A DNA stretch of 64,000 nt from positions 62,001 through 126,000 of the IMG/VR virus record IMGVR_UViG_3300009508_000011; one strand, 5' to 3'. The notes below the pieces were generated by a model. It saw only the letters and a program-made list of their open reading frames with translations, ran no database searches and was not told the DNA's origin. Positions 24,432 to 42,803 of the stretch are shown here, in pieces. Position numbers and translations under genes: made by a program. Numbering within the stretch: the stretch's first letter is position 1; the number at the start of each line of letters is the position of its first letter.

Positions 24432-25280
24432 ATGGGATTACTATACGAGAAAACAGTAAAGTTCGATAGTAAGGCCGGTAAGCTAGCTCACTCTGGTTAC
24501 TTGTCTCGTGCAGATGCCATTGCTGAATCTAATAAGGTTTACAAGTATCTGGAAGAACGTTGTAAAGAACTAAAACGTAAATTGTCTTATGACCTATCCT
24601 ACAATGGTTTCCCCAATGACCTAATTGTCACGGAAGCTTTTGGTGGCCACGGTTGTTTGATTATTCATCCAGCTGACGATGACTTTACCATTAAGTTACT
24701 TAAGGGTTGTGGTTCTGGCGATAGGGACTATGGGTTCTTACTTGAGAAGAAAGATAAGTATACCCTGTTCGATGCTGAGCACCCAGCTAAGAAAGTAGTT
24801 GTATTACCCGGTACTAACTTATTGTGTCGTATGTCTAAAAACGTTATGAAAGGTTTAAACAAACCTGACGTTTATTACAAACCTCATCCAATCACTACAG
24901 AATTTTATATACGTGAAATTGAAGTAGCCGTAGGTAAAGATAAAGTAATTAACAAACTTGCCTCTGGTGCTGAAGTGGTTGCCAATGCTGATGAAGTATG
25001 GGTATCTCGTTCTACTGAACTTGGACTATATGCTAAGTTGGATGGTAAGAAAGTCCACACCTATCGCGTTGAGTACCAAAACAAAGGTAGTTACTTTGGT
25101 TTATATGACCAAATAGAACGCATTGAAGAAGTACTATCAACTCCTCGTTCCGGAGTAATCTTCCCAAGTGATGATTATAAAGAACAGATTGATGAATATC
25201 TAGCTTATTACGAAGAGATGGTTAAAGGTTATAAGCCTAAAGCCAAAGCGCGTAAAAAGAATAAGAAGAAGAGGAAGTAA
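24432..25280 (+). CDS. KpsS/KpsC-like GT-B glycosyltransferase, putative CMP-Kdo-dependent (beta-Kdo) transferase
   Basis: YYKPHP (HP motif) followed by ADEVWVSRSTELGLYAKLDGKKV, matching the aD.V.t..S..G.eA.l.GK.V motif of capsule-synthesis CMP-sugar transferases. Confidence 0.55.
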   Translation: MGLLYEKTVKFDSKAGKLAHSGYLSRADAIAESNKVYKYLEERCKELKRKLSYDLSYNGFPNDLIVTEAFGGHGCLIIHPADDDFTIKLLKGCGSGDRDYGFLLEKKDKYTLFDAEHPAKKVVVLPGTNLLCRMSKNVMKGLNKPDVYYKPHPITTEFYIREIEVAVGKDKVINKLASGAEVVANADEVWVSRSTELGLYAKLDGKKVHTYRVEYQNKGSYFGLYDQIERIEEVLSTPRSGVIFPSDDYKEQIDEYLAYYEEMVKGYKPKAKARKKNKKKRK

Positions 25281-25283
25281 CCA

Positions 25284-26252
25284 ATGATTGTTTTTACTTG
25301 TGTAAATAAAGAAAGTGAAGACGCAGCGGTTATTTGGGCTGCTTCTTTATCTAAGGCATTGAAAGGTGGTAATGGTGGAGTTAAGACTTACATGTTCCAT
25401 ACCCCAGATGTCAATGTATCACGGTTCACTGACTTCAATGTATTCTGTGTATCCATAGGTGATATGTCTAACCTTACTCGTAAAGAAGTACTGGTTAAAG
25501 TATTGGACATGATGCATGAACGTTCTTTCGGTGAAAAGGTATTCTACACGGATACTGATGTACTATGGCAGAATCATCTTGACGAGTTAAAATCAGCTCC
25601 CTTAAATAGTAAGGTTTGGCTGGCAGCTCGTAACGACTTAGTCTTCTATGACCAAGAACGTAACAAGAAGTTCTACCCTCACTACGACCCTGAGTTTGAA
25701 CGTAAGTTAATGATTCACCCAGATGGCTATCTGAATAGTGATGTATTGTATATCTTCCTTGAAGGTATGTACGCAGCTCTACGTTCTAAGGGATTCACTT
25801 CTATGGATGAATTCTATCAGCAGTGTAAGGCTAAGAACAACTACTCGGTAGAGGATTGTTTCAATCTAATTGCTGGTGAGTATGTTAACTTGTTTGACAG
25901 ATACAATGCCTTCGCTGAAGATGTGTTCGAATTAGACTTTGGTGAGATGTTGGGTAGACGTGCGGATATTCGTAATTCACACCTCATTAACTTTCGTGGT
26001 GTACATAAACCATGGCGTGAATGTAGTGACTTCGATTTACCTGAACTGGCTGGTGCTCAGTACCCTTACGACTTTTACTTAGCAGCTTGTGAAATGTTCC
26101 GTACATATATCACAACAGACTTCCTCGAAAAGGTTAGAGCAAACGCTAAACGCTATAGCCTGATTAATGACTGGGATAGAGAAATTCTAGCTAAGTCAGG
26201 ACCATTGAAGAAGAAGTTATCTGAGTTTAAAGAACAACTTAAGAATCAGTAG
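25284..26252 (+). CDS. Glycosyltransferase family 8 (GT-A)
   Basis: VFYTDTDVL (DxD), YLNSDV, VEDCFN, RYNAF and HLINFRGVHKPW match GT8 motifs. Confidence 0.75.
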   Translation: MIVFTCVNKESEDAAVIWAASLSKALKGGNGGVKTYMFHTPDVNVSRFTDFNVFCVSIGDMSNLTRKEVLVKVLDMMHERSFGEKVFYTDTDVLWQNHLDELKSAPLNSKVWLAARNDLVFYDQERNKKFYPHYDPEFERKLMIHPDGYLNSDVLYIFLEGMYAALRSKGFTSMDEFYQQCKAKNNYSVEDCFNLIAGEYVNLFDRYNAFAEDVFELDFGEMLGRRADIRNSHLINFRGVHKPWRECSDFDLPELAGAQYPYDFYLAACEMFRTYITTDFLEKVRANAKRYSLINDWDREILAKSGPLKKKLSEFKEQLKNQ

Positions 26253-26292
26253 ACAGCATAAGCAGGGGTTCCTAGGAACCCCTAATTTATGT
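26252..26292. terminator. Bidirectional terminator flanked by TTATG motifs
   Basis: AGGGGTTCCTAGGAACCCCT between convergent genes. Confidence 0.75.
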
Positions 26293-26296
26293 CCGA

Positions 26297-26839
26297 TTAA
26301 CGATTAATGGCTTCCACCTCATAGGCAATTGCTACGCGTAGTTTATCAATAATCTTTTCTTCCGGTGCACCTTTCTTAACTTCTTGCGCTACAAGAAACC
26401 AGTCTAGTGACCCATTTTTATTCCCAGAAGAAGCAATCTTTGAGGCCACAGCGCCATTTTCAATCTTTGACTTTATAATGCCAATACTAATACGGATATG
26501 TAAAGGTGTATGTCTCATACCACCCACAGCCATATTAGAGATTATCTGATAGTCTGGACCAGTTAATTTATCAAACCACGGTAGAATAGCCAATACTGAC
26601 TTTGTATCGTGACAGAGGTAACGCTCACATTCTTTTTCCAATGCAGCTTGCCACTGGGCACAATTGATATCCACTGGGTCTTTTAGTTTATCCAATTTCG
26701 CATAAATGTCATCTGCTACGATATCTAATATCTTAGCATTGAAATTCTCTAATTGCATTTCCCAAACGAGAGTAGCCAGTACTCCTTTAATTTTAGCTAT
26801 GGCAACAGCCTTTAAGATTTCATCAGAATCGAGAATCAT
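26297..26839 (-). CDS. Hypothetical helical protein (180 aa)
   Basis: ORF with AAGGA RBS. Confidence 0.65.
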   Translation of the reverse strand: MILDSDEILKAVAIAKIKGVLATLVWEMQLENFNAKILDIVADDIYAKLDKLKDPVDINCAQWQAALEKECERYLCHDTKSVLAILPWFDKLTGPDYQIISNMAVGGMRHTPLHIRISIGIIKSKIENGAVASKIASSGNKNGSLDWFLVAQEVKKGAPEEKIIDKLRVAIAYEVEAINR

Positions 26840-26907
26840 TTTTTATCCTTTTATATTTTCATTGTTTAACTAACTTACATACAGCACAGCTATAAGTTAG
26901 TTATTTA

Positions 26908-27378
26908 TTATTCTAAGTACGAGGCATAACTACGTACTTCACTATACCCTTCAATGAAACCCTTAGAACTAAAAGTAGTTGGTCCTATGTGAACAACAGA
27001 TTTAGTTAGGAACTCATCTATGGCATACTTTATATCACTTTCTTTCTTAGGCCACAGCACTAGATTTCCACCTGCACAATTACCATCATACTTTACTATA
27101 CGTCCATTGATGTCCCAAGTGTTCGGGAGTTTGGTTCCATCAAGTAGGTCACATATGTCACCGTCGGAAGTATCGGAATTAGACAACACCAATTCTATCC
27201 GCATAGTTTTATCGTAATACAATCTTAGTTTGACGATATAGCCAGCAGAGGATACCCTAGTTGGGGATTCAAAGACAATGTCCTTTACCCTTAACCATGT
27301 GGGTGGTTGCGAATTACCTGCCGGTATTACGTAAAGTGGGAATAGTAAAGTTAAAATTACTATAAATGCTTTAAGCAT
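26908..27378 (-). CDS. Exported hypothetical protein
   Basis: Signal peptide-like MLKAFIVILTLLFPLYVIPA; a Cys pair may form a disulfide. Confidence 0.6.
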   Translation of the reverse strand: MLKAFIVILTLLFPLYVIPAGNSQPPTWLRVKDIVFESPTRVSSAGYIVKLRLYYDKTMRIELVLSNSDTSDGDICDLLDGTKLPNTWDINGRIVKYDGNCAGGNLVLWPKKESDIKYAIDEFLTKSVVHIGPTTFSSKGFIEGYSEVRSYASYLE

Positions 27379-27387
27379 AATTAAGCC

Positions 27388-27837
27388 CTAGTCTGGTTGA
27401 TAAAAGTTAATAGTGACGTTATCTTGGCATAAGTAATGTTCGACCATAGGACGAACTTCATTTATATCCAATCCTCCAGCACCACACCCTAGCGGGGGTA
27501 CGTGAAATTCATCTATAGGAGTCCTAGGTATACAACTACCCAGTTTCTCTAAGTTGTCTTGCACCCATTCTAACTTACTTGAGTTCCGCCATTCATACTT
27601 AGTTGGGAAAAGTAGTATAGCGTAATTATCCTTTATCAAATAAAGTTTTAATGTGTTTATCTTAAAATCACCCTTTCTACAAATAGAACGGTAATCCCTA
27701 AAGATATCGGGGTATCTGTCTTTACATTCCTTTGCTAGACCTAACCCCATTACACCCACGCAATTCACAGGAATAAGGACAATACCGGAATCGTTATCCC
27801 ATATGTCCTCACCAGTCCTTAAAACGAGTCCTGACAT
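27388..27837 (-). CDS. Macrodomain (Appr-1-p processing / DarG-TARG1-like) protein
   Basis: GEDIW, IPVNCVGVMGLGLAKECKDRYP, LFPTKYEW, PPLGCGAGGLD. Confidence 0.85.
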   Translation of the reverse strand: MSGLVLRTGEDIWDNDSGIVLIPVNCVGVMGLGLAKECKDRYPDIFRDYRSICRKGDFKINTLKLYLIKDNYAILLFPTKYEWRNSSKLEWVQDNLEKLGSCIPRTPIDEFHVPPLGCGAGGLDINEVRPMVEHYLCQDNVTINFYQPD

Positions 27838-27980
27838 TTAACCTCACCGATTGAATCAGCGATAGCCCCAACTATGTTATCGTTGTCTGGAACGTTCATG
27901 GATTTAACCTCAGATTGAAACTTATCTACATCGTAGTTATGTTCAACGAAAGGTACTTCTTTATCATTACAACCATCCAT

Positions 27981-28802
27981 TTAGACCATCTCCTTAGAAC
28001 AGGTTACTCGTAGGGCACGTACTTTAGAATTACGTAAATTCCTTGTTGTAGTTAAACCCTCATGTTGAATCAATGCGGTGGAGTTAAGATAACTATCTCT
28101 ATCGTTATAGATATCGCGTTTATCATAAGTTGTTAATCCACGTTTTACTTCCACTGGTTTGGTTAACTCGGGCACGTCAACTAAAATACCGGCAACTTCA
28201 TTCCATCTGTCAGATTCAATAAATCCAACTATTTTTAAATGTTCTTCTTCAAGTTTACTTATACGGTATACTTTCTTACCTACACGAATAACGCAAGATA
28301 TATAACCACGACCATATATATTTTTTAATTGTCTTTTGAAGTCATTAACACCAGATACTTTATTCCACTTAAGAAGTTTCATCTTCTTAGTATCACCAGG
28401 TAGCCATTCATCACGCTTAATGTCTTCTAGTGTTTGCCAAGGCTCATCATTTTTCTTCAATGGACTAAGTACGAAACCAGCAGCTGAGTGCTGACCCAAC
28501 AATGCTTTCTTGGCACAGATGCCAGATTTATCTGCACCATCCCTTGCCTGACTATGCCAGAGGAATAAATAGGTACCATGTTCTAACCTAGGTGATAAGT
28601 CATTCATTAATTCAACTACCGATGGGTAACAACAACTATATTGCTCACCTTCTATCGTTGCTTCGATACCGTCGAAGTATTTAACTACCTTTAACACTAC
28701 TCCTGATGAGTAAGGTCTAATGGTAACGCCCTTGGATAGGGACGAATCGCTTATGTTACCAAGAACCATATGTTCTCTTTTAAAAGAGTTATCTTTACGC
28801 AT
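27981..28802 (-). CDS. Hypothetical protein (273 aa)
   Basis: ORF with AAAGGAG RBS. Confidence 0.65.
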   Translation of the reverse strand: MRKDNSFKREHMVLGNISDSSLSKGVTIRPYSSGVVLKVVKYFDGIEATIEGEQYSCCYPSVVELMNDLSPRLEHGTYLFLWHSQARDGADKSGICAKKALLGQHSAAGFVLSPLKKNDEPWQTLEDIKRDEWLPGDTKKMKLLKWNKVSGVNDFKRQLKNIYGRGYISCVIRVGKKVYRISKLEEEHLKIVGFIESDRWNEVAGILVDVPELTKPVEVKRGLTTYDKRDIYNDRDSYLNSTALIQHEGLTTTRNLRNSKVRALRVTCSKEMV

Positions 28803-28946
28803 TCTTATATTCTCCTTTTATTGTGCGAATTCTAAACCTTTATATATGAACTTCGGATACCTAGATATCCAACATGGACTAATCAAATGAAATAGTTAGT
28901 CTATATTTTTTAACATAATAATTAATTTAGATGGGGATGCTTAGAC

Positions 28947-29480
28947 ATGAGTTCATTAAATACAATAGTTTCTGCTAGTGTAGAAAACTACGCTCAAGGC
29001 ATCGTTATCAAAAAAATAACCAATAAAACCCAACTAAAAGATTCCCAGCTGGTGGAAGTTATAGACCTAGCTTTAGGGAATGCGGATTACCACAGAGGTA
29101 TAGATGAAGATGGTTGGTCTGACGTAACTCGTAAATCAGTCACCGAATATGTAAATGGCGTACTAGAGAATCGTAGTGAGTTTATTTTAGTGGCACTTGA
29201 TTCAGACAAAGTCTGTGGTGTCATTATAGGTGGTTGGTACCGCAGGTACAATACCAAATATGTTTCAATATACGACCTATTCATCCCTAAGGAATATCGA
29301 AGACAGGGTATTGCCAAACAACTACTCGATACCGTCACCTTAGAGAAGATAGATGGTAAGCCTTTAATAGTACAGTTGATTGTTTATAATGTAAACGATA
29401 ATGCTATTGAGTTGTATGAAGATTGGGGTATGAAGTCGGTGGTCTCACAGACCAGGCGGATGGAAAGAATTTTTGAATAA
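28947..29480 (+). CDS. GNAT family acetyltransferase
   Basis: IYDLFIPKEYRRQGIAKQLL (acetyl-CoA binding motif A) and VNDNAIELYEDWG (motif B). Confidence 0.85.
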   Translation: MSSLNTIVSASVENYAQGIVIKKITNKTQLKDSQLVEVIDLALGNADYHRGIDEDGWSDVTRKSVTEYVNGVLENRSEFILVALDSDKVCGVIIGGWYRRYNTKYVSIYDLFIPKEYRRQGIAKQLLDTVTLEKIDGKPLIVQLIVYNVNDNAIELYEDWGMKSVVSQTRRMERIFE

Positions 29481-29491
29481 CAGGAATTAAA

Positions 29492-30718
29492 ATGAAATTG
29501 ACAATCTTTAAAATCTTTGAGGGTGAAGCAAGACATCTCAAAGTGGATAGTAAATTAATTAAAGAGGTAGTGCGTTATGTTGCACGCTTCGTTAATAAAA
29601 ACGACGATACACTCCAGTTCCTTGGTTCTCCTTTAATTGGCGTATATCCTTTCCGATACACTAAGGCAGATGAAAACGAGTGGTTTGATGATGTCTTAGA
29701 AATGGATGACCTTACTTTACAAAGTAATATCCGTGAACATTTCAGTACCCCAGACAATAATCTAGATGCCAGTTGGAAAATATCTTCTAATGTAACTAAC
29801 CTTTCATTTGTTTGGCTAACGCATAGAATACTTACGTCACCTAAGCTTAGAGACCGTGAGAAAGAAGATGGGGCAATGGCCTGTATCAAAATGTTACAAT
29901 ATAAGTTAATCTCATCTCTAGATTACCGCTTCTTTCCATACCCTGCAAATTCTGAAGTAGCGGCCGCTGTATACTCTAGCCTTACTAAGAAGTATCTACT
30001 TAAGAAACATGGTAGCTGGGCTAAGGTTATTGAAGCAAGAGCTGAAGACTTACTCAGTGACGACTCTATCCATAAGGGTGCGTTAAATAAGATGAATGAT
30101 GACCATGATATAGTTTACATGATAAATGATACACAAGGTCGACATAAAGACATCTATAAACGTGTTACTTCATTGTTCTACGAATTCCGTGAACAGGATT
30201 CAAGGATTCAATCTATTTCTGCAACTATTGAACTATCTGGTGAGATGGGTGTTAGGGATAAACAGAACAACTATGGTAAGTATCGTTCAGCAGCGCACGA
30301 CATAGCCTCTACGCCTTCGTCTATGTTACGAGAAAAAGCTCTTAGTGCAATTACCGCAATAGTTCATACAGCTCCACCACAGGCTGTTAAGGAGTCCCTT
30401 GAGTGGATGGCTTCTAACTATGGTGCTCCTCGTACTGGGTACATTAAAGAATTTGTAGAGAAGAATATCACACATGCCTGTGAATACATTCGTAAAAACG
30501 AATTACCTTTAAGTGACCTTGCAACTATCCTAGTGAAACTTCGCGGTATCCATTTAGCGTCTCGTCAATCAGACGATACTGTTTTAGAGATTCGTGACTT
30601 AGGCACTAAGATAACTGACCAGAGTGTTAAGAGTAAGAACCAAGCTGTACATGCATCTGTTCGTGCTGCTGTTACATTGTACTTGGTACTTCGTGTATTA
30701 GCTAAGGATAATCTATAA
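29492..30718 (+). CDS. Conserved Chimalliviridae (probable virion) protein
   Basis: FVNKN...FLGSPLIGVY..R motif and LKKHGSW..VIE.R are recalled from phiKZ-like core genes. Confidence 0.7.
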   Translation: MKLTIFKIFEGEARHLKVDSKLIKEVVRYVARFVNKNDDTLQFLGSPLIGVYPFRYTKADENEWFDDVLEMDDLTLQSNIREHFSTPDNNLDASWKISSNVTNLSFVWLTHRILTSPKLRDREKEDGAMACIKMLQYKLISSLDYRFFPYPANSEVAAAVYSSLTKKYLLKKHGSWAKVIEARAEDLLSDDSIHKGALNKMNDDHDIVYMINDTQGRHKDIYKRVTSLFYEFREQDSRIQSISATIELSGEMGVRDKQNNYGKYRSAAHDIASTPSSMLREKALSAITAIVHTAPPQAVKESLEWMASNYGAPRTGYIKEFVEKNITHACEYIRKNELPLSDLATILVKLRGIHLASRQSDDTVLEIRDLGTKITDQSVKSKNQAVHASVRAAVTLYLVLRVLAKDNL

Positions 30719-30803: not shown

Positions 30804-30813
30804 TGTTGAATAA

Positions 30814-36797: not shown

Positions 36798-36875
36798 AAT
36801 CTTATTCCTTTCATTTAAAGAGTTATTAATTCAAAATTGGTTATGTTACTTTACTTAAGTAACTACTTCACCTTT

Positions 36876-36893
36876 AGAATATAGGTTTGAGTA
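36876..36893 (-). promoter_or_regulatory. Early-type promoter upstream of the lipoprotein
   Basis: Minus strand reads TACTCAAACCTATATTCT. Confidence 0.45.
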
Positions 36894-36962
36894 TCTTTGG
36901 AAACGACTTATATAGACGGCATAGAGGGGAGCCCTTACGGACTCCCGACTACACGAAGTACA

Positions 36963-37118
36963 TTACTTCTGTTGCTGTCTACCAGCTTTGCCACCGCGAC
37001 CGCCTGAACCACCTTTGCTATTACCTGAGGTTTTAGCATTGGTCTTTCGTTTACGTATCGCGAAAACAACACCGCCGATAACGGCAGCTACGACAATATA
37101 CGGAATATATTGGTCCAT
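36963..37118 (-). CDS. Single-pass membrane micro-protein with a basic, Gly/RGG-rich tail (51 aa), absent from the ORF track
   Basis: Hand translation: MDQYIPYIVVAAVIGGVVFAIRKRKTNAKTSGNSKGGSGGRGGKAGRQQQK. AGGAG RBS and a terminator downstream. Confidence 0.7.
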   Translation of the reverse strand: MDQYIPYIVVAAVIGGVVFAIRKRKTNAKTSGNSKGGSGGRGGKAGRQQQK

Positions 37119-37177
37119 GATTTACTCCTAATCGATGGGTATCGTAAAAAGACCGAACGGTCTTTCATACTATCTGT

Positions 37178-37672
37178 CTAAAGAAAGAGTTCTTTAAACC
37201 CTTGGAAACGCATCGAAAGAAAATCTGTACCTACAATATAATGGTCCACTAGAGCTATGTCTAATGGGGCCAGTACTTCCTTAACCTTTACAGTAAGGTC
37301 TATATCGTGTTGTGACGGCTTGGAATGTCTAAATGGGTGTGAGTGCACCAGTGCTATACTTACAGCTTTCTGCCTTAATGCTGACTCCACAATAGGTCTA
37401 CAATAAGCAGTAACTTTATCAACAGTACCGAAGAACAACTCTTCATAACTTATAACACGGTGTCCGTGTCCAAACAATATTACCCCAAATACTTCACGGT
37501 CATGTTTAGTCATTTTATATTCTAGGAACTGTTTGATATACTCAGGACCTTTAAGGTGTTCACCTTGAAGATTACGTACCCAAACTATACTAGCAGCACG
37601 CTCTAGTATTTCTTTGTTGGATAAATCCCGTATACGAAGTTCTGCTTCTTTTTGCTCTTCGGTATTAGACAT
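37178..37672 (-). CDS. RadC-like JAB/MPN domain protein
   Basis: REVFGVI, ELFFGTVD, LVHSHP...PSQHD (intact JAB metal motif), LVDHYIVG. Confidence 0.85.
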   Translation of the reverse strand: MSNTEEQKEAELRIRDLSNKEILERAASIVWVRNLQGEHLKGPEYIKQFLEYKMTKHDREVFGVILFGHGHRVISYEELFFGTVDKVTAYCRPIVESALRQKAVSIALVHSHPFRHSKPSQHDIDLTVKVKEVLAPLDIALVDHYIVGTDFLSMRFQGFKELFL

Positions 37673-37674
37673 AA

Positions 37675-37854
37675 CTATTTCTTCTTACGTTGATTTTTCT
37701 TTCTAGCCTTTGCTTGGGCTTTACGCTTCTTACGACTAGCCGGTGTAGAACCAGTAGAACGAACATATTCACTTCTACGTGATTGTGAATTATAAGCATT
37801 GCTTGCAGCTAGACCTTCTGCCATTGCTAACATTAAACCTACATCTTTATTCAT
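37675..37854 (-). CDS. Small protein with a highly basic C-terminus (59 aa), absent from the ORF track
   Basis: Hand translation: MNKDVGLMLAMAEGLAASNAYNSQSRRSEYVRSTGSTPASRKKRKAQAKARKKNQRKKK. GGAG RBS; fills the gap exactly. Confidence 0.65.
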   Translation of the reverse strand: MNKDVGLMLAMAEGLAASNAYNSQSRRSEYVRSTGSTPASRKKRKAQAKARKKNQRKKK

Positions 37855-38980
37855 TTGGTTCTCCCATTATATCTTTAACTGTATCGCCTTCTTTAACTTC
37901 AATGACATTAGGTGCATCTGGCCCAGTATCCGCAAAGAAGAAATTAGGTTGTGTGAAACCACGACCAATATCCGGCTGTACCTCTTCAGGTAGATTATCT
38001 TGAAAAGGACCAACATCAATGTGGATAAATGCTTTAGTGTTGCCCCTAATTGATATATTCTGTGGCTCAGGTATGTAGGTAGGGAAATACCTAGTCAATA
38101 ACTCTTCATCGGATAGTTGGTTTTCCTTTTCAATTACGAGTTTAGCCTTTGCCGATTCACTAGAGAATAGTTCATGTGCACGTTCCATAGTGGTTATGTC
38201 ATCATTAATCAATTGTCTAGTTTCAGGGTCGAACAGTACAGGCTTAACATCTTTCCAACTTTCTCTTGTGGATTCTTCACCAGCAAACATTGAAGAGTTT
38301 CTACGAGCACGATACTCATCAGACTCTTCCTTAGTTTCTCCACCAGCACGCCAGTTATCTTTAACATCATCATAATCACACAGACGCACTGCAATGACAT
38401 CATATTCAGAATGACAACCGTTCTCATTAGAGAACTTATCAGCATTCGGATAGCACATCTTTTCGATGGTTCCATCTTTCAACATGATATCATAAGCATC
38501 TTTAAAACGCCACGAGTTATACGCAACCCACACACCAAAGTCTTCTGGTCTATGTGTCCAATGGGTTAAGTCTTCCTTACCGCGAGGAGACCAGTCTATA
38601 CCTAACTCAGTTTGCTCACCACGTTTAATTGGTGGTACAAATGGTTTATGTACATACTCTTCTTCGACATTCGGTTTACTAGGTTTAGATTCAGGTGACT
38701 TAACCTTGGTAATTTTACCAATTAAAGCAGATAACCTTTGGTAATCATCAACGGTAACGATACCATCATAGTTATCACCAGCTATGGTCTTGACCTTTAA
38801 TCTGGCTGACCATTTACTATAAGTACCGCAAGACACACATACACAGTGATTACCTGGGATACTTACACATTCGTTAACTCCCTGAACGGTAACGCCCTTT
38901 TTAGTATTGATAATGTGTGGTGATTTACAGGAAGAACATACGTAAGATATTTTACCGCCTTTACTAAGCATTGTCTCCAC
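37847..38980 (-). CDS. Hypothetical protein with an N-terminal Zn finger
   Basis: CSSC...CVSC at the N-terminus. Confidence 0.65.
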   Translation of the reverse strand: METMLSKGGKISYVCSSCKSPHIINTKKGVTVQGVNECVSIPGNHCVCVSCGTYSKWSARLKVKTIAGDNYDGIVTVDDYQRLSALIGKITKVKSPESKPSKPNVEEEYVHKPFVPPIKRGEQTELGIDWSPRGKEDLTHWTHRPEDFGVWVAYNSWRFKDAYDIMLKDGTIEKMCYPNADKFSNENGCHSEYDVIAVRLCDYDDVKDNWRAGGETKEESDEYRARRNSSMFAGEESTRESWKDVKPVLFDPETRQLINDDITTMERAHELFSSESAKAKLVIEKENQLSDEELLTRYFPTYIPEPQNISIRGNTKAFIHIDVGPFQDNLPEEVQPDIGRGFTQPNFFFADTGPDAPNVIEVKEGDTVKDIMGEPNE

Positions 38981-39566
38981 TCCCTGACCATTGGTTTATA
39001 AAATCGGTTTCGGAATCAGGGGCACTTAATGAGGATTCGATTTTGTCCCACTGCTTAGGGTAATCCACCAAAGCCACTACGTTGAAATGGCCACCGTAGG
39101 TAGATATTTTGGATAAAGCCGAACGCTTATCCTTAGACTCTACCAATACAACCCTTACCTTACCATCCTGACGCATACTAGAGATAAGACTCTGACATTT
39201 AAGATGACTGAAGTCTTCGAAGATAACAACATCATACCCATCAACATCTGGTAGTTCACGCTCATGTACTATTTCAAGTCCATGACATCCAGTACGGGCA
39301 GAGCTATTTTCACGACCCATGTCCCTAATTCTCTTATCTCTAGTTACCAGTAACACACGTTGTTTAACAACTTTGTTTAAGAAATCCATAGCGATATGTG
39401 TAGCAGCCGTAAGTCCTGTTTGTCTAGGCGTTACCACTATTACGTTACCACCATTGACAATGGCATTAACTGCCATGTACTGCATCTTACTAGGTAACTT
39501 ATCGATATCGAACACTGTCTTAATTCTTTTATTACCTACGAATTCGTCAGTTTGATAATAAGGCAT
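38964..39566 (-). CDS. Terminase-ATPase-like P-loop protein with a degenerate Walker A
   Basis: VIVVTPRQTGLT (compare PRQLGKS in the true terminase), VVIFEDF (Walker B-like), VVLVES, and DFINQW. Confidence 0.5.
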   Translation of the reverse strand: MPYYQTDEFVGNKRIKTVFDIDKLPSKMQYMAVNAIVNGGNVIVVTPRQTGLTAATHIAMDFLNKVVKQRVLLVTRDKRIRDMGRENSSARTGCHGLEIVHERELPDVDGYDVVIFEDFSHLKCQSLISSMRQDGKVRVVLVESKDKRSALSKISTYGGHFNVVALVDYPKQWDKIESSLSAPDSETDFINQWSGSGDNA

Positions 39567-39728
39567 TGTCGGGTTCCTTCTTTTATTTTAATAACATACA
39601 GCAAAGCCAATCATTAACATTAGCGATACTAAGAATACTCCAGCTATCTGTGCAGGCACGCACCCAGCTTTAGCATCTACAAAAATTCTACGTGTTCCAT
39701 TAAATAAAGAATACATGTAATATTACTC

Positions 39729-40280
39729 CTACCACTTCTGTCCAGCAACGTACATAGCCTGATTGACTATGGTATCCTGTTGTTGGTCGGTATCGTGATT
39801 TATAAATTGTACATAAGGAGTCAGTGCTTGACTATAGTCTCCAGCAAATACTATTTCTCTAGTCTTTACCGAATAGTGTATTTCCCTAAGGGAATAATAA
39901 GGGATATTGCAGAACACTTCATTGAGTAACAGCTCTACCCCATACCACACCTTGTTAACTATATCCTCTACAACCTCACCGGTCAAAAAAGATACAGCCT
40001 TATACTGCACATAACTCCAACCATAGAAATCGTCTCCTACGTTACCCATCGCATCGCGAATTAACATGGAACGTCTAAGACACATTTCTAGTAAAGCTAC
40101 CATAACCTCATCTTCAGTACGGTTGACTGTAATGTGATTACTTAATAAATTCGGCAGAAAGTAAAGCGTCTCAATGACAACTCTCTTGCCATCGGACGCC
40201 TTTGATATTTCTTCCATCGAACCTATTGCTAGTTTCATGTTAGGGTCACTTATCTTGACCCTACAGTTTCTTACTCTCAT
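39729..40280 (-). CDS. Hypothetical protein (183 aa)
   Basis: ORF in operon. Confidence 0.6.
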   Translation of the reverse strand: MRVRNCRVKISDPNMKLAIGSMEEISKASDGKRVVIETLYFLPNLLSNHITVNRTEDEVMVALLEMCLRRSMLIRDAMGNVGDDFYGWSYVQYKAVSFLTGEVVEDIVNKVWYGVELLLNEVFCNIPYYSLREIHYSVKTREIVFAGDYSQALTPYVQFINHDTDQQQDTIVNQAMYVAGQKW

Positions 40281-40294
40281 AGGTCCCCTAGATA

Positions 40295-41014
40295 CTACGG
40301 GTTATGGTTGGCCTGTAATACAGAGCGTTGAACAAACTTCATTGCTTCTTCTAGAGGCATTGATTCATATTCTTCAGTACTACTCAAATCGGAAGAGTAT
40401 GTCCACCCATCTAAAGCCAAACCAAGTTCAGTGTACTGAACAGCGCCAGTATTCTTATCTGGTTTAGAAGTAGGTATTAGAATAGATGCACCGTTAAGGG
40501 AAGGTTCAGCCCAAGGAAGTTCTGTAAAGTCCTTACGAACAAATACTTTCTTCTGTTGGAATAGCACAAACTCAACTGACTTCTTGTGGTCCCAGCTAGC
40601 AGATGCTTTTGTAATATCAGGCATTTGATAATCGGTAAAGAATTCATAGTTGGTACTAGTCGTCAATGACAACTTAAACACACGTTCGAATACGGGCATA
40701 CCTTGGATTATGTTACCTAGCATGTAACTAACATTTGCGGGTAAGGCTAACTCTTCACCTACTGGACGTAAATCCATGATGTCTTTTAACTCTACTTCCA
40801 CAACCCACATGGTACTGGTTCTATCCGGATGTTGTCCTGGTATATTGACAACTTCATCAAGATAACCAGTTAATACTGTTTTAGAACCGAACGGGTCTTC
40901 TATTCTACACTGCTCTCCTTCGTTACGTTTAAGTAACTCAGCAAAGGCTTTAGTTGTTACGCGGTCAAAGTTAAATAAAACCTTGTCCCCGTTGACTTCG
41001 TAATGGAATGACAT
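40295..41014 (-). CDS. Hypothetical protein (239 aa)
   Basis: ORF with AAGGAG RBS. Confidence 0.65.
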   Translation of the reverse strand: MSFHYEVNGDKVLFNFDRVTTKAFAELLKRNEGEQCRIEDPFGSKTVLTGYLDEVVNIPGQHPDRTSTMWVVEVELKDIMDLRPVGEELALPANVSYMLGNIIQGMPVFERVFKLSLTTSTNYEFFTDYQMPDITKASASWDHKKSVEFVLFQQKKVFVRKDFTELPWAEPSLNGASILIPTSKPDKNTGAVQYTELGLALDGWTYSSDLSSTEEYESMPLEEAMKFVQRSVLQANHNP

Positions 41015-41034
41015 AACTGCCCCTTCTCCTTTTA

Positions 41035-42006
41035 TTATTTTTGTACTACACCGACCACCGTATCATTTTCAGTAACGATTAATCGAGTAACTCTATTCGC
41101 TTCCATGATTTCCAAAGCCTCACCAAAGCGAGAACTTTTATCCACCGTTTTAGGGTGGGCCGTCATGAAATCAAATACTTCTGTACTAATGGGTTTACCA
41201 ACATTAGCCTGTAGACAGCGACGTAAGTCACCATCCGTGATGATACCTTCCAATCTATGGCGGTTACCAACCAGAGCCATGCCTAGTCTACCCCTACTAA
41301 TGTGCCACATGACATCAGCGAGTTCCATGTCCTTTGTAACAAAGGGCAAGTCTTCTGAGCGCATAACGTCTTCAACGCGACACAATAGTTTCTTACCAAG
41401 AGACCCACCGGGATGAAATCTTGCGAAGTCTTCCGGTTTAAAATCACGAGCATTCAATAGGGCTACCGTAATAGCGTCACCAAGGGCCATAGCAGCCGTT
41501 GTAGAGCTAGTTGGTGCCAATTGTAAAGGACAGGCCTCTGTAGTAACACCTGCTCTTAAACTGACTGTAGAGGCTTTGGCTAAAGTATTGTCGTGGTTCT
41601 TAGTAATTGAAATGATAACGTTACCATTATCTTCCAAGAAAGAAAGTAACTTAAGTACTTCCTCAGTCTCGCCAGAATTACTCAAGGCGAGAAATACGTC
41701 GTTGGGTTGCACCATACCTAAGTCACCATGAAAGGCTTCTCCGGGATGCATGAAGAACGATGGTGTTCCAGTAGATGCTAAACTAGCAGCTATCTTTTTA
41801 CCAACTATACCAGACTTACCCATACCACAAACAATTACACGGCCGTTTGTTTGTAGTATTTTACTAATAGCGGTAACGAAACTAACGGAGTCTTCACGTA
41901 GATTATCCGCTAATTCATTTAGGCCTTCTATCTCATTATAGATAGCATCTAAGCCATGTTTAACTGACTTAGTTAAATTACCACCCACTACTACTGGATT
42001 TATCAT
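41035..42006 (-). CDS. kdsD: Arabinose-5-phosphate isomerase (KdsD/KpsF/GutQ family; SIS + 2 CBS)
   Basis: GRVIVCGMGKSGIVGKKIAASLASTGTPSFFMHPGEAFHGDLG, LSNSGET, APTSSTT, FARFHPGGSLG, GIITDGDLRR. Confidence 0.95.
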   Translation of the reverse strand: MINPVVVGGNLTKSVKHGLDAIYNEIEGLNELADNLREDSVSFVTAISKILQTNGRVIVCGMGKSGIVGKKIAASLASTGTPSFFMHPGEAFHGDLGMVQPNDVFLALSNSGETEEVLKLLSFLEDNGNVIISITKNHDNTLAKASTVSLRAGVTTEACPLQLAPTSSTTAAMALGDAITVALLNARDFKPEDFARFHPGGSLGKKLLCRVEDVMRSEDLPFVTKDMELADVMWHISRGRLGMALVGNRHRLEGIITDGDLRRCLQANVGKPISTEVFDFMTAHPKTVDKSSRFGEALEIMEANRVTRLIVTENDTVVGVVQK

Positions 42007-42803
42007 TGGTCTAGCCTCATTCGTTTAACGGTCGCTTCGTAGTCAGCTTGTGTATCTACACCATGCTTAGGTTCTATCAGCGCCGTCATAGCTTTTATAG
42101 TCATTCCGTTTTCGAGTGCTCTTAGCTGTTCTAGTCCCTCAGTCTGTTCAAGTACTGATGGTGGTAACTTACTAAATTTCCTCAGGGTTTTTACGGTGTA
42201 CCCATACATACCGACATGTCTGTAATATTTAAAATCTTCTACGGTGTTCCTCACGTAGGGGGCAGAGGCCCTAGTAAATAATAGTGCATGGTCTTTTATA
42301 CCAGTTACTACTTTAACAACATTAACATTATTTAAATCTGAAATATCACTTACCTCAGTCTTTAAAGTAACTATGTCGGCATTACTATACTTAGTAGCTA
42401 TAGCTAACTGCTTTATTAACATAGGGTCTATTTCAGGTTCGTCACCCTGAACATTCAACACTACGGTATCGTCAGATAGTCTTAATTTATCACAAGCCTC
42501 TAATAACCTATCGGTTCCAGAGTTATGAAATGGACTAGTTAGTATAGTAGGAACTCCGTGTTTGGATAGTGCCTTGGTTATAGATTTATGGTCTACTGCA
42601 ACCATAACCTTACCTTTACCTATTCCAGCTTTCTTACAAGCATTATACACATGCCACACAAGTGGCTTACCATTAATAGGTAATAGTACCTTACCCGGTA
42701 ATCTGGTAGAACTTATTCTGGCTGGGATTATAACCACCACACCAGAACTATCTTTCTTGAACCATTTAAACTTACCGAGTATAGCATTAAAAATCTTTCT
42801 CAT
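42003..42803 (-). CDS. kdsB: CMP-Kdo synthetase (3-deoxy-manno-octulosonate cytidylyltransferase, KdsB/KpsU)
   Basis: IIPARISSTRLPGKVL, SGTDRL, NVQGDEP, RHVGMYGY, LEQTEGLEQLRALENG, GVDT..D. Confidence 0.95.
   Translation of the reverse strand: MRKIFNAILGKFKWFKKDSSGVVVIIPARISSTRLPGKVLLPINGKPLVWHVYNACKKAGIGKGKVMVAVDHKSITKALSKHGVPTILTSPFHNSGTDRLLEACDKLRLSDDTVVLNVQGDEPEIDPMLIKQLAIATKYSNADIVTLKTEVSDISDLNNVNVVKVVTGIKDHALLFTRASAPYVRNTVEDFKYYRHVGMYGYTVKTLRKFSKLPPSVLEQTEGLEQLRALENGMTIKAMTALIEPKHGVDTQADYEATVKRMRLDQ

What the first reader, a model, noticed from the sequence alone, without database searches (positions are those of the whole stretch)
24432..42803. Phage-encoded CMP-Kdo pathway plus Kdo-transferase-like enzyme: a candidate jumbo-phage glycosylation system
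Seen: KpsF/KdsD (41035-42006) and KpsU/KdsB (42003-42803), plus an operon of a coiled-coil protein, a KPHP-motif GT-B transferase (24432-25280) and a GT8 transferase (25284-26252), with a sugar-type MTase nearby. Established: KpsF, KpsU and the beta-Kdo transferases KpsS/KpsC form the core of group 2 capsule region 1, where CMP-Kdo builds a Kdo linker that is then extended. HP motifs mark CMP-sugar transferases, and GT8 enzymes extend LPS cores. CMP-Kdo is short-lived, so a dedicated synthetase suggests a dedicated consumer. Inference: the phage builds a Kdo-primed, possibly methyl-capped glycan. It could sit on virion proteins or appendages (shielding, adhesion), on host LPS/capsule (superinfection exclusion), or on a lipid carrier. 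I know of no described system of this kind in nucleus-forming phages.
Basis: partly seen in the sequence, partly recalled or inferred. Interest (0 to 1): 0.9.

Follow-up and report, generated by a model that had tools for sequence, protein, structure and literature searches.

The report
Jumbo-phage Kdo supply plus fibre-linked glycosyltransferases
A marine nucleus-forming jumbo phage carries two genes for making activated Kdo (a bacterial envelope sugar) and, 16 kb away, a small operon with an undescribed KpsC-like sugar transferase that in other phages sits beside giant threonine-rich fibre-like proteins and sometimes beside Kdo genes, which suggests that phages sugar-coat their own proteins with Kdo.

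Summary
The genes are real. KdsD/KpsF (41035-42006, -) and KdsB/KpsU (42003-42803, -) pass curated family cut-offs. The window encodes chimallin and PhuZ, so this is a nucleus-forming jumbo phage. The operon at 24075-26252 (+) encodes a small helical protein, a 282-aa enzyme with an invariant KxHP motif, and a true GT8. No methyltransferase, KdsA or KdsC was found.

The 282-aa protein belongs to an unnamed family seen mainly in phage and viral contigs (phrog_26179; 189 clusters). Its model is GT-B-like and its only solved relative by sequence is KpsC. It keeps KpsC's Lys133/Tyr134 and HP positions but lacks the nucleophile Asp of QxxxD. It is therefore not a canonical GT107/GT99 enzyme and is probably inverting.

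Family context is the main new evidence. In 75 of 97 loci a giant Thr-rich repeat protein lies directly upstream, next to tail-fibre or packaging genes. In other marine viral contigs the same transferase sits in one cluster with kdsA/kdsB. All relatives checked for kdsB carry it together with the GT pair.

Best reading (about 0.45): Kdo-primed, hexose-extended O-glycosylation of a phage fibre-like protein. The acceptor in this phage is not identified. Rivals are host LPS/capsule remodelling, or an unrelated donor sugar.

The parts
24075..24425 (+). Small helical (coiled-coil-like) protein, 116 aa, first gene of the GT operon. Conserved partner of the transferase, with core motif LVE(E/S)..LTE.TS.IV(E/D)H(V/I)(T/S)(T/S)LD.RM.
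   Evidence: No Pfam, NCBIfam or PHROG hit. Homologues lie directly upstream of the transferase in relatives L012 and L009. Small proteins with the same motif precede it in Vibrio phages KVP40 and D479 and in L216 and L218; L220 has a small helical protein there without the full motif.
24432..25280 (+). 282-aa GT-B-like putative CMP-sugar (probably CMP-Kdo) transferase of an uncharacterised family found mainly in phage and viral contigs. Invariant D54, K109, Y110, G127, N129, K150, H152, P153 and G241. Polybasic C-terminal tail.
   Evidence: phrog_26179 3e-26. 189 cluster representatives. Invariant columns. AF2 pLDDT 93.9. Foldseek hits are GT-B proteins with KpsC prominent. KpsC is the only PDB sequence hit. 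hhalign to KpsC and KpsS.
25284..26252 (+). GT8-family retaining hexosyltransferase, 322 aa, GT-A fold. Has DTD (DxD) at residues 90-92, NSDV, and the C-terminal FRGVHKPW motif.
   Evidence: PF01501 E 0.002, sub-threshold. Homologues carry PF01501. Profile against PDB: WbbM 3e-13, LgtC 1.8e-9, GlyE 6.6e-6. AF2 pLDDT 85 and Foldseek WbbM/LgtC/GlyE/UGGT/glycogenin. Motifs read.
41035..42006 (-). KdsD/KpsF arabinose-5-phosphate isomerase (SIS plus tandem CBS), the first committed step to Kdo.
   Evidence: TIGR00393 3.6e-101 above cut-off; PF01380 and PF00571. 48% identical to E. coli KpsF.
42003..42803 (-). KdsB/KpsU CMP-Kdo synthetase, the last step; overlaps kdsD by 4 bases.
   Evidence: PF02348 6.9e-48; NF003952 262 bits and TIGR00466 210 bits, both above cut-off. 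Catalytic-motif columns invariant in alignment A2. 40% identical to E. coli KpsU. Nearest cellular homologues are Vibrio, Pseudoalteromonas and Agarivorans KdsB at about 45-47%.
43199..45418 (+). Tail-fibre-type gene cluster divergent from kdsB: DUF1353 (43199-43600), DUF4376 (43611-44156), a protein with an Mtd_N-like N-terminus (44170-44772) and a 218-aa ORF. Possible link between the Kdo genes and fibres.
   Evidence: Pfam hits. In relatives of the transferase, DUF1353 (L216) or Mtd_N and Phage_fiber_2/Peptidase_S74 genes (L218) lie next to the GT module instead.
21898..22626 (-). 242-aa protein sharing the Mtd_N-like fibre N-terminus with 44170-44772. A fibre-type paralogue next to the GT operon region.
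   Evidence: BLASTP 33% over 81 aa, E 9e-16. The cross-hit was also seen in relatives.
23490..23510 (+). Terminator-like hairpin upstream of the GT operon, just after the DUF7484 gene.
   Evidence: This is a consensus scan only.
26264..26283 (+). Terminator-like hairpin 12 nt after the GT8 stop codon; closes the three-gene unit.
   Evidence: This is a consensus scan only.

Best explanation
The phage carries two cooperating modules. Module 1 (kdsB-kdsD, overlapping genes) boosts CMP-Kdo. KdsD pulls ribulose-5-P into arabinose-5-P, the host's KdsA and KdsC make Kdo, and the phage KdsB activates it with CTP. This is the same 'first and last step' logic as kpsF/kpsU in capsule loci. Module 2 (helical protein, HP-motif GT-B enzyme, GT8) is a protein O-glycosylation unit. 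The GT-B enzyme binds the CMP-sugar with its KxHP, Lys109/Tyr110 and Ser-Glu196 elements and transfers Kdo to Ser/Thr of a phage fibre-like protein. Transfer is probably by direct, inverting displacement, because the Asp nucleophile of KpsC is absent. The GT8 then adds an alpha-linked hexose from a UDP-sugar. The small helical protein is a conserved accessory (adaptor or chaperone), or possibly itself a substrate. Shown: gene identities, fold class, conserved residues, synteny and co-occurrence. Inferred: Kdo as the donor, a protein as the acceptor, the inverting mechanism, the order of the two transferases, and the functional link between the two modules.
For: Enzyme identities. Similarity to KpsC/KpsS is specific among solved structures and better than to a polysialyltransferase; KpsC Lys133/Tyr134 align with the family's invariant K109/Y110. 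Both modules were found on all five relatives' contigs that were checked for kdsB: window contig, 3300002038_000006, 3300020375_000001 and JGI 3300002038, and the 197,357-bp contig by matching contig length. Co-occurrence outside this clade: of 77 unrelated KdsB-bearing IMG/VR loci, three (L039, L043, L075) encode the same transferase family within 10 kb. In L039 and L212 it is the only GT recognised in a cluster with KdsA plus a cupin, together with KdsB and a 2OG oxygenase in L039 and a methyltransferase-like ORF in L212. Their KdsB proteins are only 32-36% identical to the window's, which suggests separate acquisitions. Acceptor: 75 of 97 family loci have an ORF of at least 30% Thr directly upstream, up to 1701 aa and 47% Thr. 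The Thr-rich-protein, helical-protein, GT-B order is seen in KVP40 and in L218 and L220; L216 has only a Thr-rich stretch in the upstream protein. Tail-fibre genes flank the module in Lullwater, Cr30 and L218. A further KdsB locus (L079) carries a 49%-Thr ORF. Several solved GT8 relatives act on protein-linked glycans, for example GlyE on serine-rich repeat adhesins (plus background knowledge).
Against: No Thr-rich ORF exists in any frame of the 64-kb window, so the acceptor here is unknown. The two modules are 16 kb apart on opposite strands. Most family members have no Kdo gene in the short stretches fetched, and 74 of 77 viral KdsB loci lack this transferase, so each gene also occurs without the other. 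Sequence and fold similarity to KpsC is weak: E 0.008 to 0.56, hhalign probability 51%, TM 0.33-0.38. Natural Ser/Thr-O-Kdo has no precedent apart from promiscuous Maf enzymes (bioRxiv 10.1101/2020.06.03.131540, abstract seen). L039 and L075 transferases belong to one clade, so co-occurrence outside the chimallivirus clade rests on essentially one further transferase lineage.
Confidence: 0.45

Rival explanations
1. Host-envelope remodelling. The kds genes act as auxiliary metabolic genes that keep or raise CMP-Kdo for host LPS or capsule during a long jumbo-phage infection. The GT-B and GT8 enzymes modify LPS core or a Kdo-lipid at the inner membrane, for example for superinfection exclusion or envelope stability.
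For: GT8's best solved relatives include the LPS/LOS and O-antigen enzymes WbbM and LgtC. KdsB is a recurrent viral gene (360 IMG/VR stretches), mostly without the GT-B family nearby. The chimallivirus-clade GT-B has a polybasic C-terminal tail that could bind anionic membranes, as KpsC has a C-terminal membrane anchor (PMC10148158). The phage KdsB is closest to gammaproteobacterial KdsB.
Against: The family-wide neighbours of the GT-B enzyme are Thr-rich proteins, tail fibres and packaging genes, not LPS or capsule genes. No export, flippase or lipid-carrier genes were found in the window. T7-like phages with about 54 genes keep this gene in the structural module.
Confidence: 0.2
2. The two modules are unrelated. 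The GT operon glycosylates a phage protein using a host-made donor other than CMP-Kdo (a CMP-nonulosonic acid such as pseudaminic or legionaminic acid, or another nucleotide sugar). The kds pair serves a separate purpose.
For: The HP motif is shared with CMP-sialic-acid-type transferases (PMC10148158), and one family member weakly hits the polysialyltransferase Pfam family. Caulobacter and Vibrio hosts of family-bearing phages make nonulosonic acids (background knowledge), and KVP40, Cr30 and Lullwater lack a KdsB. The QxxxD motif of Kdo transferases is not kept. The loci are 16 kb apart, and L009-type relatives show no kdsB.
Against: The clusters in L039, L212 and L075 pair this transferase with kdsA and/or kdsB and with no other CMP-sugar pathway. 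Similarity is better to KpsC/KpsS than to NeuS. All Gram-negative hosts supply CMP-Kdo, so the absence of phage kds genes does not argue against Kdo.
Confidence: 0.2
3. DNA hypermodification. KdsD feeds an arabinose pathway and the GTs glycosylate modified bases in phage DNA, as in arabinosyl-5-hydroxycytosine phages.
For: Arabinosylating phages encode an arabinose-5-phosphate isomerase, a nucleotidyltransferase, GT-B transferases and a ThyA-like enzyme (PMC13326640). The window has a ThyA homologue at 46363-47292. The polybasic tail could bind nucleic acid.
Against: That pathway uses a bifunctional pyrophosphorylase-kinase (AfhE), a HAD phosphatase (AfhF) and GT4-like transferases, and none are present. 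The window's cytidylyltransferase passes the KdsB equivalog cut-off. ThyA sits with DHFR and dCMP deaminase as an ordinary dTMP set. The GT-B family's neighbours are structural genes.
Confidence: 0.04
4. The 282-aa protein is not a glycosyltransferase. It would instead be, for example, a fibre assembly factor or another CMP/CDP-dependent transferase such as a TagF-like phosphotransferase, so the operon does not build a Kdo glycan.
For: There is no Pfam or NCBIfam hit. TM-scores to GT-B structures are low. Its position after tail-fibre genes is typical of assembly chaperones. Radical-SAM genes recur beside it.
Against: Invariant polar residues (D54, K109, Y110, N129, K150, H152) fit an active site. 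All structural matches are nucleotide-sugar enzymes. No TagF-type structure appears among sequence or fold hits. One or more GT-A genes lie in the same gene block in the window, L009, L012, L216, L218 and L075.
Confidence: 0.08

Closest known systems
KpsF/KpsU of E. coli group 2 capsule region 1 (paralogues of KdsD/KdsB)
   Same: It has the same two enzymes and only these two of the four CMP-Kdo steps. Identities are 48% and 40% to UTI89 KpsF and KpsU. The presumed role is to raise CMP-Kdo supply for a dedicated consumer.
   Different: It is encoded by a nucleus-forming phage. No KpsE/D/M/T export genes and no canonical KpsC/KpsS were found. In the phage the two genes overlap, whereas in kps loci kpsE and kpsD separate them.
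KpsC/KpsS retaining beta-Kdo transferases (GT107; also WbbB GT99)
   Same: It has a two-domain GT-B-derived fold, a KxHP motif, a Ser-x-x-G...GK segment after it, and Lys/Tyr aligned with KpsC Lys133/Tyr134.
   Different: There is no QxxxD nucleophile Asp: an invariant Asn aligns with the Gln, and the Asp column is variable. The single module is much smaller at 282 aa. No member reaches the Pfam Capsule_synth threshold. Neighbours point to a protein acceptor rather than a lyso-phosphatidylglycerol acceptor. The mechanism is probably inverting.
Serine-rich-repeat adhesin glycosylation in Gram-positive bacteria (GtfA/GtfB priming, GT8 enzymes such as GlyE extending)
   Same: It shows the same logic: a very Ser/Thr-rich repeat protein is encoded next to a priming GT-B enzyme, a small accessory partner and one or more GT8/GT2 extenders. 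GlyE is among the best structural matches of the window's GT8.
   Different: The priming enzyme family is different (GT4 GtfA against an HP-motif KpsC-like enzyme). The donor is different (UDP-GlcNAc against a presumed CMP-Kdo). The system is phage-borne. In this window the Thr-rich partner is missing.
Mycobacteriophage virion glycosylation (Freeman et al. 2023, cited in PMC12619734)
   Same: Phage-encoded glycosyltransferases decorate the phage's own structural proteins.
   Different: There the glycans sit on the C-termini of capsid and tail-tube subunits. No ulosonic acid, phage-encoded sugar-activation pathway or Thr-rich repeat protein is known to me for that system (background knowledge, not checked here).
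Maf flagellin nonulosonic-acid transferases
   Same: They O-link a CMP-activated ulosonic acid to Ser/Thr of a filament protein. Promiscuous Maf enzymes can even transfer Kdo (bioRxiv 10.1101/2020.06.03.131540).
   Different: The protein family is unrelated. Kdo is not their natural donor. They are not phage-encoded.

Membership tests
KdsB / KpsU CMP-Kdo synthetase (TIGR00466, PF02348) | Scores above the curated equivalog and subfamily cut-offs over the full length | tested here: met
   TIGR00466 210.1 bits against 155.2; NF003952 262 against 193; PF02348 163.8 against 22.6.
KdsB / KpsU CMP-Kdo synthetase (TIGR00466, PF02348) | Conserved nucleotide- and sugar-binding motifs (N-terminal PAR..S.R.PGK, QGDEP, C-terminal GVDT) | tested here: met
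   P27, R29, S32, R34, P36, K38, Q119-P123, H196, G248 and D250 are invariant across phage and bacterial homologues in A2. Assignment of roles to these residues is from background knowledge.
KdsD / KpsF arabinose-5-phosphate isomerase (TIGR00393) | SIS domain followed by tandem CBS domains, scoring above the family cut-off | tested here: met
   TIGR00393 338.2 bits against 203.7; PF01380 1.4e-26; PF00571 with 2 stretches. It is below the narrower KdsD and GutQ equivalog cut-offs, so which paralogue type it is remains open.
Complete phage-encoded CMP-Kdo pathway (KdsD, KdsA, KdsC, KdsB) | Kdo-8-phosphate synthase KdsA present | tested here: not met
   phmmer with a phage KdsA against all window ORFs of at least 60 aa found no hit at E up to 10. 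There is no DAHP_synth_1 hit in any Pfam scan. The rest of the 206-kb genome was not examined.
Complete phage-encoded CMP-Kdo pathway (KdsD, KdsA, KdsC, KdsB) | Kdo-8-phosphate phosphatase KdsC (HAD) present | tested here: inconclusive
   No HAD motif I was found by regular expression and there was no HAD Pfam hit among the scanned ORFs. No profile search dedicated to KdsC was possible.
Retaining beta-Kdo transferases GT107 (KpsC/KpsS) and GT99 (WbbB) | HP motif in the C-terminal nucleotide-binding domain | tested here: met
   K150, H152 and P153 are invariant in 132 and in 52 sequences. They align to KpsC K-V-H-P in hmmsearch and hhalign.
Retaining beta-Kdo transferases GT107 (KpsC/KpsS) and GT99 (WbbB) | Invariant QxxxD motif whose Asp is the catalytic nucleophile (KpsC Asp160; PMC10148158) | tested here: not met
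   hhalign places invariant N129 on KpsC Gln156 and a variable column (Cys132 in the window) on Asp160. No conserved acidic residue follows N129 in A3. The alignment probability is only 51%, so this is a moderate-confidence negative.
Retaining beta-Kdo transferases GT107 (KpsC/KpsS) and GT99 (WbbB) | Recognised by the family profile (Pfam PF05159 Capsule_synth) | tested here: not met
   The window protein has no Pfam hit. Only 5 of 132 family members hit PF05159, with a best E of 0.001.
Retaining beta-Kdo transferases GT107 (KpsC/KpsS) and GT99 (WbbB) | Modified GT-B fold resembling KpsC | tested here: inconclusive
   Foldseek gives KpsC entries at ranks 2, 3, 6 and 13, with probability 0.98-1.0 and 206-280 aligned columns, but TM is only 0.33-0.38. 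Tetraselmis virus 'capsule polysaccharide biosynthesis' proteins are the next viral matches.
Retaining beta-Kdo transferases GT107 (KpsC/KpsS) and GT99 (WbbB) | Uses CMP-beta-Kdo as donor | not testable with these tools
   Only genomic association is available: kdsB/kdsD in the same genome and kdsA/kdsB adjacent in L039, L043, L075 and L212.
Glycosyltransferase family 8 | GT-A fold with a DxD motif and the C-terminal G-x-x-KPW motif; recognised by family profiles | tested here: met
   D90-T-D92, N151-S-D-V and F237-R-G-V-H-K-P-W244 were read. The single sequence is below the Pfam cut-off, but the profile hits WbbM, LgtC, 3tzt and GlyE, and Foldseek gives E 1e-11 to GT8 structures.
Group 2 capsule assembly system (kps region 1 and 3) | ABC transporter KpsMT and export proteins KpsE/KpsD, with KpsC and KpsS | tested here: not met
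   None of these was found among the Pfam- or PHROG-scanned ORFs of the window. Compare the E. coli locus.
Phage DNA arabinosylation pathway (arabinosyl-5-hydroxycytosine) | AfhE-type pyrophosphorylase-kinase, AfhF HAD phosphatase, GT4-like DNA transferases and 5-hydroxy-dCMP synthase (PMC13326640) | tested here: not met
   Only an arabinose-5-phosphate isomerase is shared. The nucleotidyltransferase is a bona fide KdsB with no kinase domain, no HAD was found, and ThyA lies with DHFR and dCMP deaminase.
Chimalliviridae-like nucleus-forming jumbo phages | Chimallin shell protein and PhuZ tubulin, with multisubunit RNAP | tested here: met
   phrog_4795 'nuclear shell protein' 2.6e-93; phrog_4733 PhuZ 5.6e-87; RNAP beta 9.6e-140. 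The source contig is 206 kb.

The most novel reading that the evidence does not exclude
A widespread, undescribed phage system O-glycosylates threonine-rich, mucin-like fibre proteins with Kdo, an LPS sugar not known as a natural protein glycan. It uses a KpsC-derived HP-motif transferase that has lost the covalent-intermediate Asp, and so probably inverts to give alpha-Kdo-O-Thr/Ser. Several phage lineages, including a nucleus-forming jumbo phage, carry their own CMP-Kdo genes to feed it.
Probability: 0.33. Interest if true: 0.85.

Novelty: new variant of a known kind. Interest (0 to 1): 0.72.

Why it matters
If correct, it would give a biochemical role to a family with no Pfam or NCBIfam match and no PHROG function: at least 189 clusters at 50% identity, found in Vibrio KVP40-like, Caulobacter T4- and T7-like, marine metagenomic and jumbo phages. 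It would add a new natural protein-sugar linkage (Kdo on Ser/Thr). It would also explain why phages carry Kdo-pathway genes. Glycan-coated, Thr-rich fibres could affect adsorption, host range, particle stickiness in seawater or mucus, and recognition by host defences or antibodies. The idea is directly testable, because KVP40, Cr30 and Lullwater are culturable phages with the same transferase and a Thr-rich neighbour. For glycosyltransferase enzymology, a KpsC relative without the nucleophile Asp would show how a retaining double-displacement scaffold relates to an inverting one.

Tried and rejected
Searches that gave nothing:
- Megablast of 24000-43000 against GenBank phages gave no match.
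- Single-protein search for related loci with kdsB, the 239-aa neighbour and ThyA found only the source contig.
- The search for related loci with alignments A1 and A3 failed because no stretch was conserved enough. It was replaced by a back-translated KPHPITT DNA pattern.
- Literature searches found no paper linking jumbo phages or chimallin with Kdo genes, no paper on KdsB as a phage auxiliary gene, and none on Thr-rich phage fibre proteins with such a transferase.

Features sought in the window and not found:
- A methyltransferase near the operon: Pfam on the neighbours and a SAM-motif regular expression found nothing.
- KdsA and KdsC.
- A Thr-rich acceptor: no 30-aa stretch in any frame has 10 or more Thr.
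- Homologues of the non-repeat parts of Thr-rich proteins from KVP40, L039 and L212.

Ideas tested and weakened:
- DNA arabinosylation was considered because KdsD-like isomerases occur in that pathway. It was rejected on component mismatch.
- A second, more diverse family profile (A5) against PDB still hit only KpsC, but at E 0.56, so the sequence link is fragile.

Full report
WHAT THE WINDOW IS. The 64-kb window is positions about 62,001-126,000 of IMG/VR contig IMGVR_UViG_3300009508_000011, which is 206,117 bp. It encodes a chimallin-type nuclear shell protein (9140-11035, phrog_4795, 2.6e-93), PhuZ tubulin (20101-21090), a phage RNAP beta subunit, a DNA polymerase and a large terminase. It is therefore a nucleus-forming (chimallivirus-like) jumbo phage. 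No GenBank phage is close at the DNA level. Metagenomic relatives exist at 57-84% protein identity.

CHECK OF THE OBSERVATION. KdsD/KpsF (41035-42006, -) has SIS plus tandem CBS domains and scores 338 bits on TIGR00393 against a cut-off of 204. KdsB/KpsU (42003-42803, -) scores 210 bits on the kdsB equivalog against a cut-off of 155, and 164 bits on PF02348. They are 48% and 40% identical to KpsF and KpsU of E. coli UTI89. The KdsB catalytic-motif columns are invariant across phage and bacterial homologues. The two genes overlap by 4 bases.

On the + strand, 24075-24425 (116 aa, helical), 24432-25280 (282 aa) and 25284-26252 (322 aa) are separated by 6 and 3 nt. The block is bracketed by terminator-like hairpins. 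The 322-aa protein is a GT8. The single sequence is just under Pfam's cut-off. A profile of 11 homologues hits WbbM (3e-13), LgtC (1.8e-9) and GlyE. Its model (pLDDT 85) matches GT8 structures at E about 1e-11. It carries the DxD and G-x-x-KPW motifs.

The 'sugar-type methyltransferase nearby' could not be found by Pfam scans of the neighbours or by a SAM-motif scan. KdsA and a HAD-type KdsC are also absent from the window. The phage therefore encodes only the first and last steps of CMP-Kdo synthesis, which is exactly the subset duplicated in group 2 capsule loci.

THE 282-AA PROTEIN. It has no Pfam or NCBIfam hit. It belongs to phrog_26179 (unknown function, 3e-26). An exhaustive HMMER search found 189 cluster representatives at 50% identity. 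In alignments of 132 and 52 members, D54, K109, Y110, G127, N129, K150, H152, P153 and G241 are invariant, and E196 is nearly so. AlphaFold gives a confident two-domain alpha/beta model (pLDDT 93.9).

Every top Foldseek match in the PDB is a GT-B glycosyltransferase or epimerase. KpsC entries rank 2, 3, 6 and 13 and are the only near full-length alignments. TM-scores are only 0.33-0.38, plausibly because of a different domain opening. Among viral models, the matches after the family's own members (Cr30, Vibrio phage VH1) are the 'capsule polysaccharide biosynthesis' proteins of Tetraselmis virus 1.

By sequence, KpsC is the only solved structure hit by the family profile. E is 0.008 with A1 and 0.56 with the smaller profile A5. 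Five members weakly hit Pfam Capsule_synth and one hits polysialyltransferase.

I fetched the E. coli UTI89 kps locus and ran profile comparisons:
- KpsC: E 1.5e-4, probability 51%, 176 columns.
- KpsS: E 5e-5, probability 67%, C-terminal domain only.
- NeuS polysialyltransferase: E 4e-3, probability 8%.

In the KpsC alignment the invariant K109/Y110 fall on KpsC Lys133/Tyr134. Lys133 contacts Kdo O7 and the CMP phosphate according to PMC10148158. KxHP falls on K-V-H-P. However, invariant N129 falls on Gln156 of the QxxxD motif, and the nucleophile Asp160 falls on a variable column (Cys132 here). No conserved acidic residue follows N129.

The protein is therefore KpsC/KpsS-like, but it fails a defining feature of the retaining beta-Kdo transferases. 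I infer a direct-displacement (inverting) mechanism with D54 or E68 as the base. This is inference only.

CONTEXT IN RELATIVES OF THE PHAGE. The helical-protein/GT-B/GT8 operon is syntenic in all relatives examined. kdsB, and where it was looked at kdsD, accompany it on all five contigs checked: the source contig, IMG/VR 3300002038_000006, 3300020375_000001, JGI 3300002038, and (by matching contig length) a 197,357-bp contig. More distant relatives of about 150 kb (L009-L011, 57% identity) have the GT pair and KdsD, but there is no KdsB next to it and none in the homologue list. One relative (L012) has an expanded operon: radical-SAM enzyme, helical protein, GT-B, a GT2-like protein, GT8, two GT8-radical-SAM fusions and a further GT8 with an overlapping GT24 hit. 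This shows that the locus builds an oligosaccharide of variable complexity.

CONTEXT ACROSS THE FAMILY: THE MAIN NEW EVIDENCE.

(i) From the Kdo side. An alignment-based scan of IMG/VR found 360 KdsB-encoding stretches, and the best 80 loci were fetched. An HMM of the GT-B family found a member within 10 kb of KdsB in three of the 77 loci outside the chimallivirus clade (L039, L043, L075).
- L039 gene order: collagen-repeat protein, a 1683-aa protein with 47% Thr, GT-B, cupin, 176-aa ORF, 2OG-Fe(II) oxygenase, KdsB, KdsA, then lectin/CBM-type proteins.
- L075 gene order: Thr-rich ORF, GT-B, DUF4422, aminotransferase, epimerase, two GT2, SPASM and B12-radical-SAM proteins, KdsA, a KdsB-methyltransferase fusion, then tail sheath.
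- L212 gene order: 1701-aa Thr-rich protein, GT-B, cupin, a methyltransferase-like ORF, KdsA.
- A fourth KdsB locus, L079, ends in a 796-aa ORF with 49% Thr.
In L039 and L212 the GT-B enzyme is the only transferase recognised, and Kdo genes are the only sugar-activation genes, in the scanned part of the cluster. Their KdsB proteins are only 32-36% identical to the window's, which suggests separate acquisitions.

(ii) From the transferase side. Over all fetched loci with at least 300 nt upstream, 75 of 97 have an ORF of at least 30% Thr directly upstream on the same strand, with a median gap of 67 nt. The usual downstream genes are a GroES-like protein, a small ORF, the large terminase and the portal.

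(iii) In isolated phages. Caulobacter phage Lullwater (T7-like) has tail fibre gp40, a Thr/Ser/Tyr-rich gp41, then the transferase gp42, followed by holin and terminase. Cr30 (T4-like) has a homologous fibre gene, a Thr/Tyr-rich 116-aa ORF and the transferase, before the neck genes. Vibrio phage KVP40 has the Thr/Ser-rich 0254, the small helical 0255 and the transferase 0256.

(iv) The closest non-chimallivirus relatives of the window's enzyme show the full order.
- L218: Thr/Ser-rich protein, helical protein with the motif VEH.ATLDER, GT-B, GT2, GT8, radical SAM, then a tail fibre with Phage_fiber_2/Peptidase_S74 and an Mtd_N protein.
- L216 (a 202-kb contig): a 671-aa protein with a Thr-rich stretch, helical protein, GT-B, GT8, GT2, GT8, radical SAM, DUF1353.
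- L220: Thr-rich protein, a small helical protein (without the full motif), GT-B.

In the window, DUF1353, DUF4376 and an Mtd_N-like fibre gene sit beside kdsB instead. An Mtd_N-like paralogue (21898-22626) sits beside the GT operon region.

INTERPRETATION. The family is best read as a protein O-glycosyltransferase for Thr-rich, fibre-like phage proteins, working with a small helical partner and variable GT-A extenders. Its KpsC/KpsS-like CMP-sugar site and its repeated clustering with kdsA/kdsB make CMP-Kdo, or a modified Kdo, the most likely donor. For this phage I therefore favour the following model. KdsD and KdsB, together with host KdsA and KdsC, raise CMP-Kdo. The 282-aa enzyme puts Kdo on a phage protein. 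GT8 extends it with an alpha-hexose.

The weak points are as follows. The window has no Thr-rich ORF in any frame. The two modules are 16 kb apart. Each gene type often occurs without the other. Similarity to KpsC is marginal. Natural Ser/Thr-O-Kdo is unprecedented except for promiscuous Maf enzymes. I put the full model at about 0.45.

The rivals are host LPS/capsule remodelling (0.2), a non-Kdo donor with unrelated kds genes (0.2), DNA glycosylation (0.04) and a non-glycosyltransferase role (0.08). The DNA rival was considered because arabinosylating phages use an arabinose-5-phosphate isomerase. It was rejected because the AfhE/AfhF/GT4 components are missing and the cytidylyltransferase is a bona fide KdsB.

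COMPARISON AND NOVELTY. The Kdo genes work like kpsF/kpsU. The transferase resembles KpsC/KpsS but is not a GT107/GT99 member by the QxxxD test. The overall logic most resembles serine-rich-repeat adhesin glycosylation: a priming GT-B enzyme with a partner and GT8 extenders. Among phages it most resembles mycobacteriophage virion glycosylation.

Literature searches found no description of Kdo-pathway genes or this transferase family in nucleus-forming phages, and none of Thr-rich phage proteins paired with such an enzyme. In GenBank phages, KdsB occurs in only 6 records and the transferase family in 23. No record appears in both lists, and none appears to be a nucleus-forming phage. I rate this a new variant of a known kind, and of high interest. 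The family-level association is strong. It is testable in culturable phages. It could reveal a new protein-glycan linkage.

Noticed in passing
L212:3230-8335 (-); L039:2522-7573 (+); L126:4581-9692 (+): These are giant ORFs of up to 1701 aa with about 47% Thr and 14-22% Ser, built from short repeats such as STTTTWNTS(K/Q/R). A Cys-containing non-repeat insert lies mid-protein. They sit directly upstream of the transferase family in most marine viral loci. No PHROG match was found.
   Followed up: partly
L012:12536-14539 and 14582-16624 (+): Two GT8-radical-SAM fusion proteins (667 and 680 aa) lie in the expanded operon of a close relative. Stand-alone radical-SAM genes homologous to KVP40.0260 recur beside the transferase in L012, L146-type loci, L216, L218, KVP40 and D479. 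Their role is unknown.
   Followed up: partly
window 25227-25280 (C-terminus of the 282-aa protein): The protein ends in a polybasic tail, KGYKPKAKARKKNKKKRK. The tail is conserved in character in chimallivirus-clade homologues (L012, L009) but absent from Vibrio and Caulobacter phage homologues. It could mediate membrane or nucleic-acid binding, or localisation relative to the phage nucleus.
   Followed up: no
L039:9429-9995 (+); L075:9055-10332 (+); L212:1415-1999 (-): Enzymes that could modify Kdo sit next to kdsA/kdsB in other phages. There is a 2OG-Fe(II) oxygenase (reminiscent of the Kdo 3-hydroxylase KdoO, from background knowledge), a KdsB-methyltransferase fusion, and a methyltransferase-like ORF. 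This suggests derivatised Kdo in those phages.
   Followed up: no
L009:18785-19771 (-), also L010 and L011: More distant relatives of about 150 kb keep KdsD but show no KdsB beside it. This may be a lineage with only the isomerase.
   Followed up: partly
window 45464-49260 (-): This is an ordinary nucleotide-metabolism block. It holds DHFR with an N-terminal extension (45464-46351), thymidylate synthase (46363-47292), a 364-aa protein with only a PP-loop/QueC-like N-terminal motif (47685-48779) and dCMP deaminase (48769-49260).
   Followed up: partly
window 27388-37672: Other recognisable genes lie between the two loci. They are a weak macro-domain protein (27388-27837), a GNAT acetyltransferase (28947-29480), an SLT lytic transglycosylase (32038-32622), a non-specific endonuclease (33930-34670) and a RadC-like JAB protein (37178-37672).
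   Followed up: no
window 43065-43095 (both strands): A strong 13-bp GC-rich hairpin flanked by T and A runs (a bidirectional terminator-like element) lies in the divergent intergenic region between kdsB and the DUF1353 gene. This is an odd place for a terminator.
   Followed up: no
window 37847-41014 (-): Four genes follow kdsD on the same strand (239, 183, 200 and 377 aa). The first two follow with short gaps, then there is a 160-nt gap. They are conserved in relative L007 and have no family match. The 377-aa protein has Cys-x-x-Cys pairs. They may or may not belong to a kds operon.
   Followed up: no
L015:4905-5498 (KVP40.0254): The Thr/Ser-rich KVP40 protein has a non-repeat N-terminal part with duplicated G-A-I-S motifs before the repeats. 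In D479 the equivalent Thr-rich ORF appears to be unannotated and lies opposite two tiny annotated ORFs.
   Followed up: no
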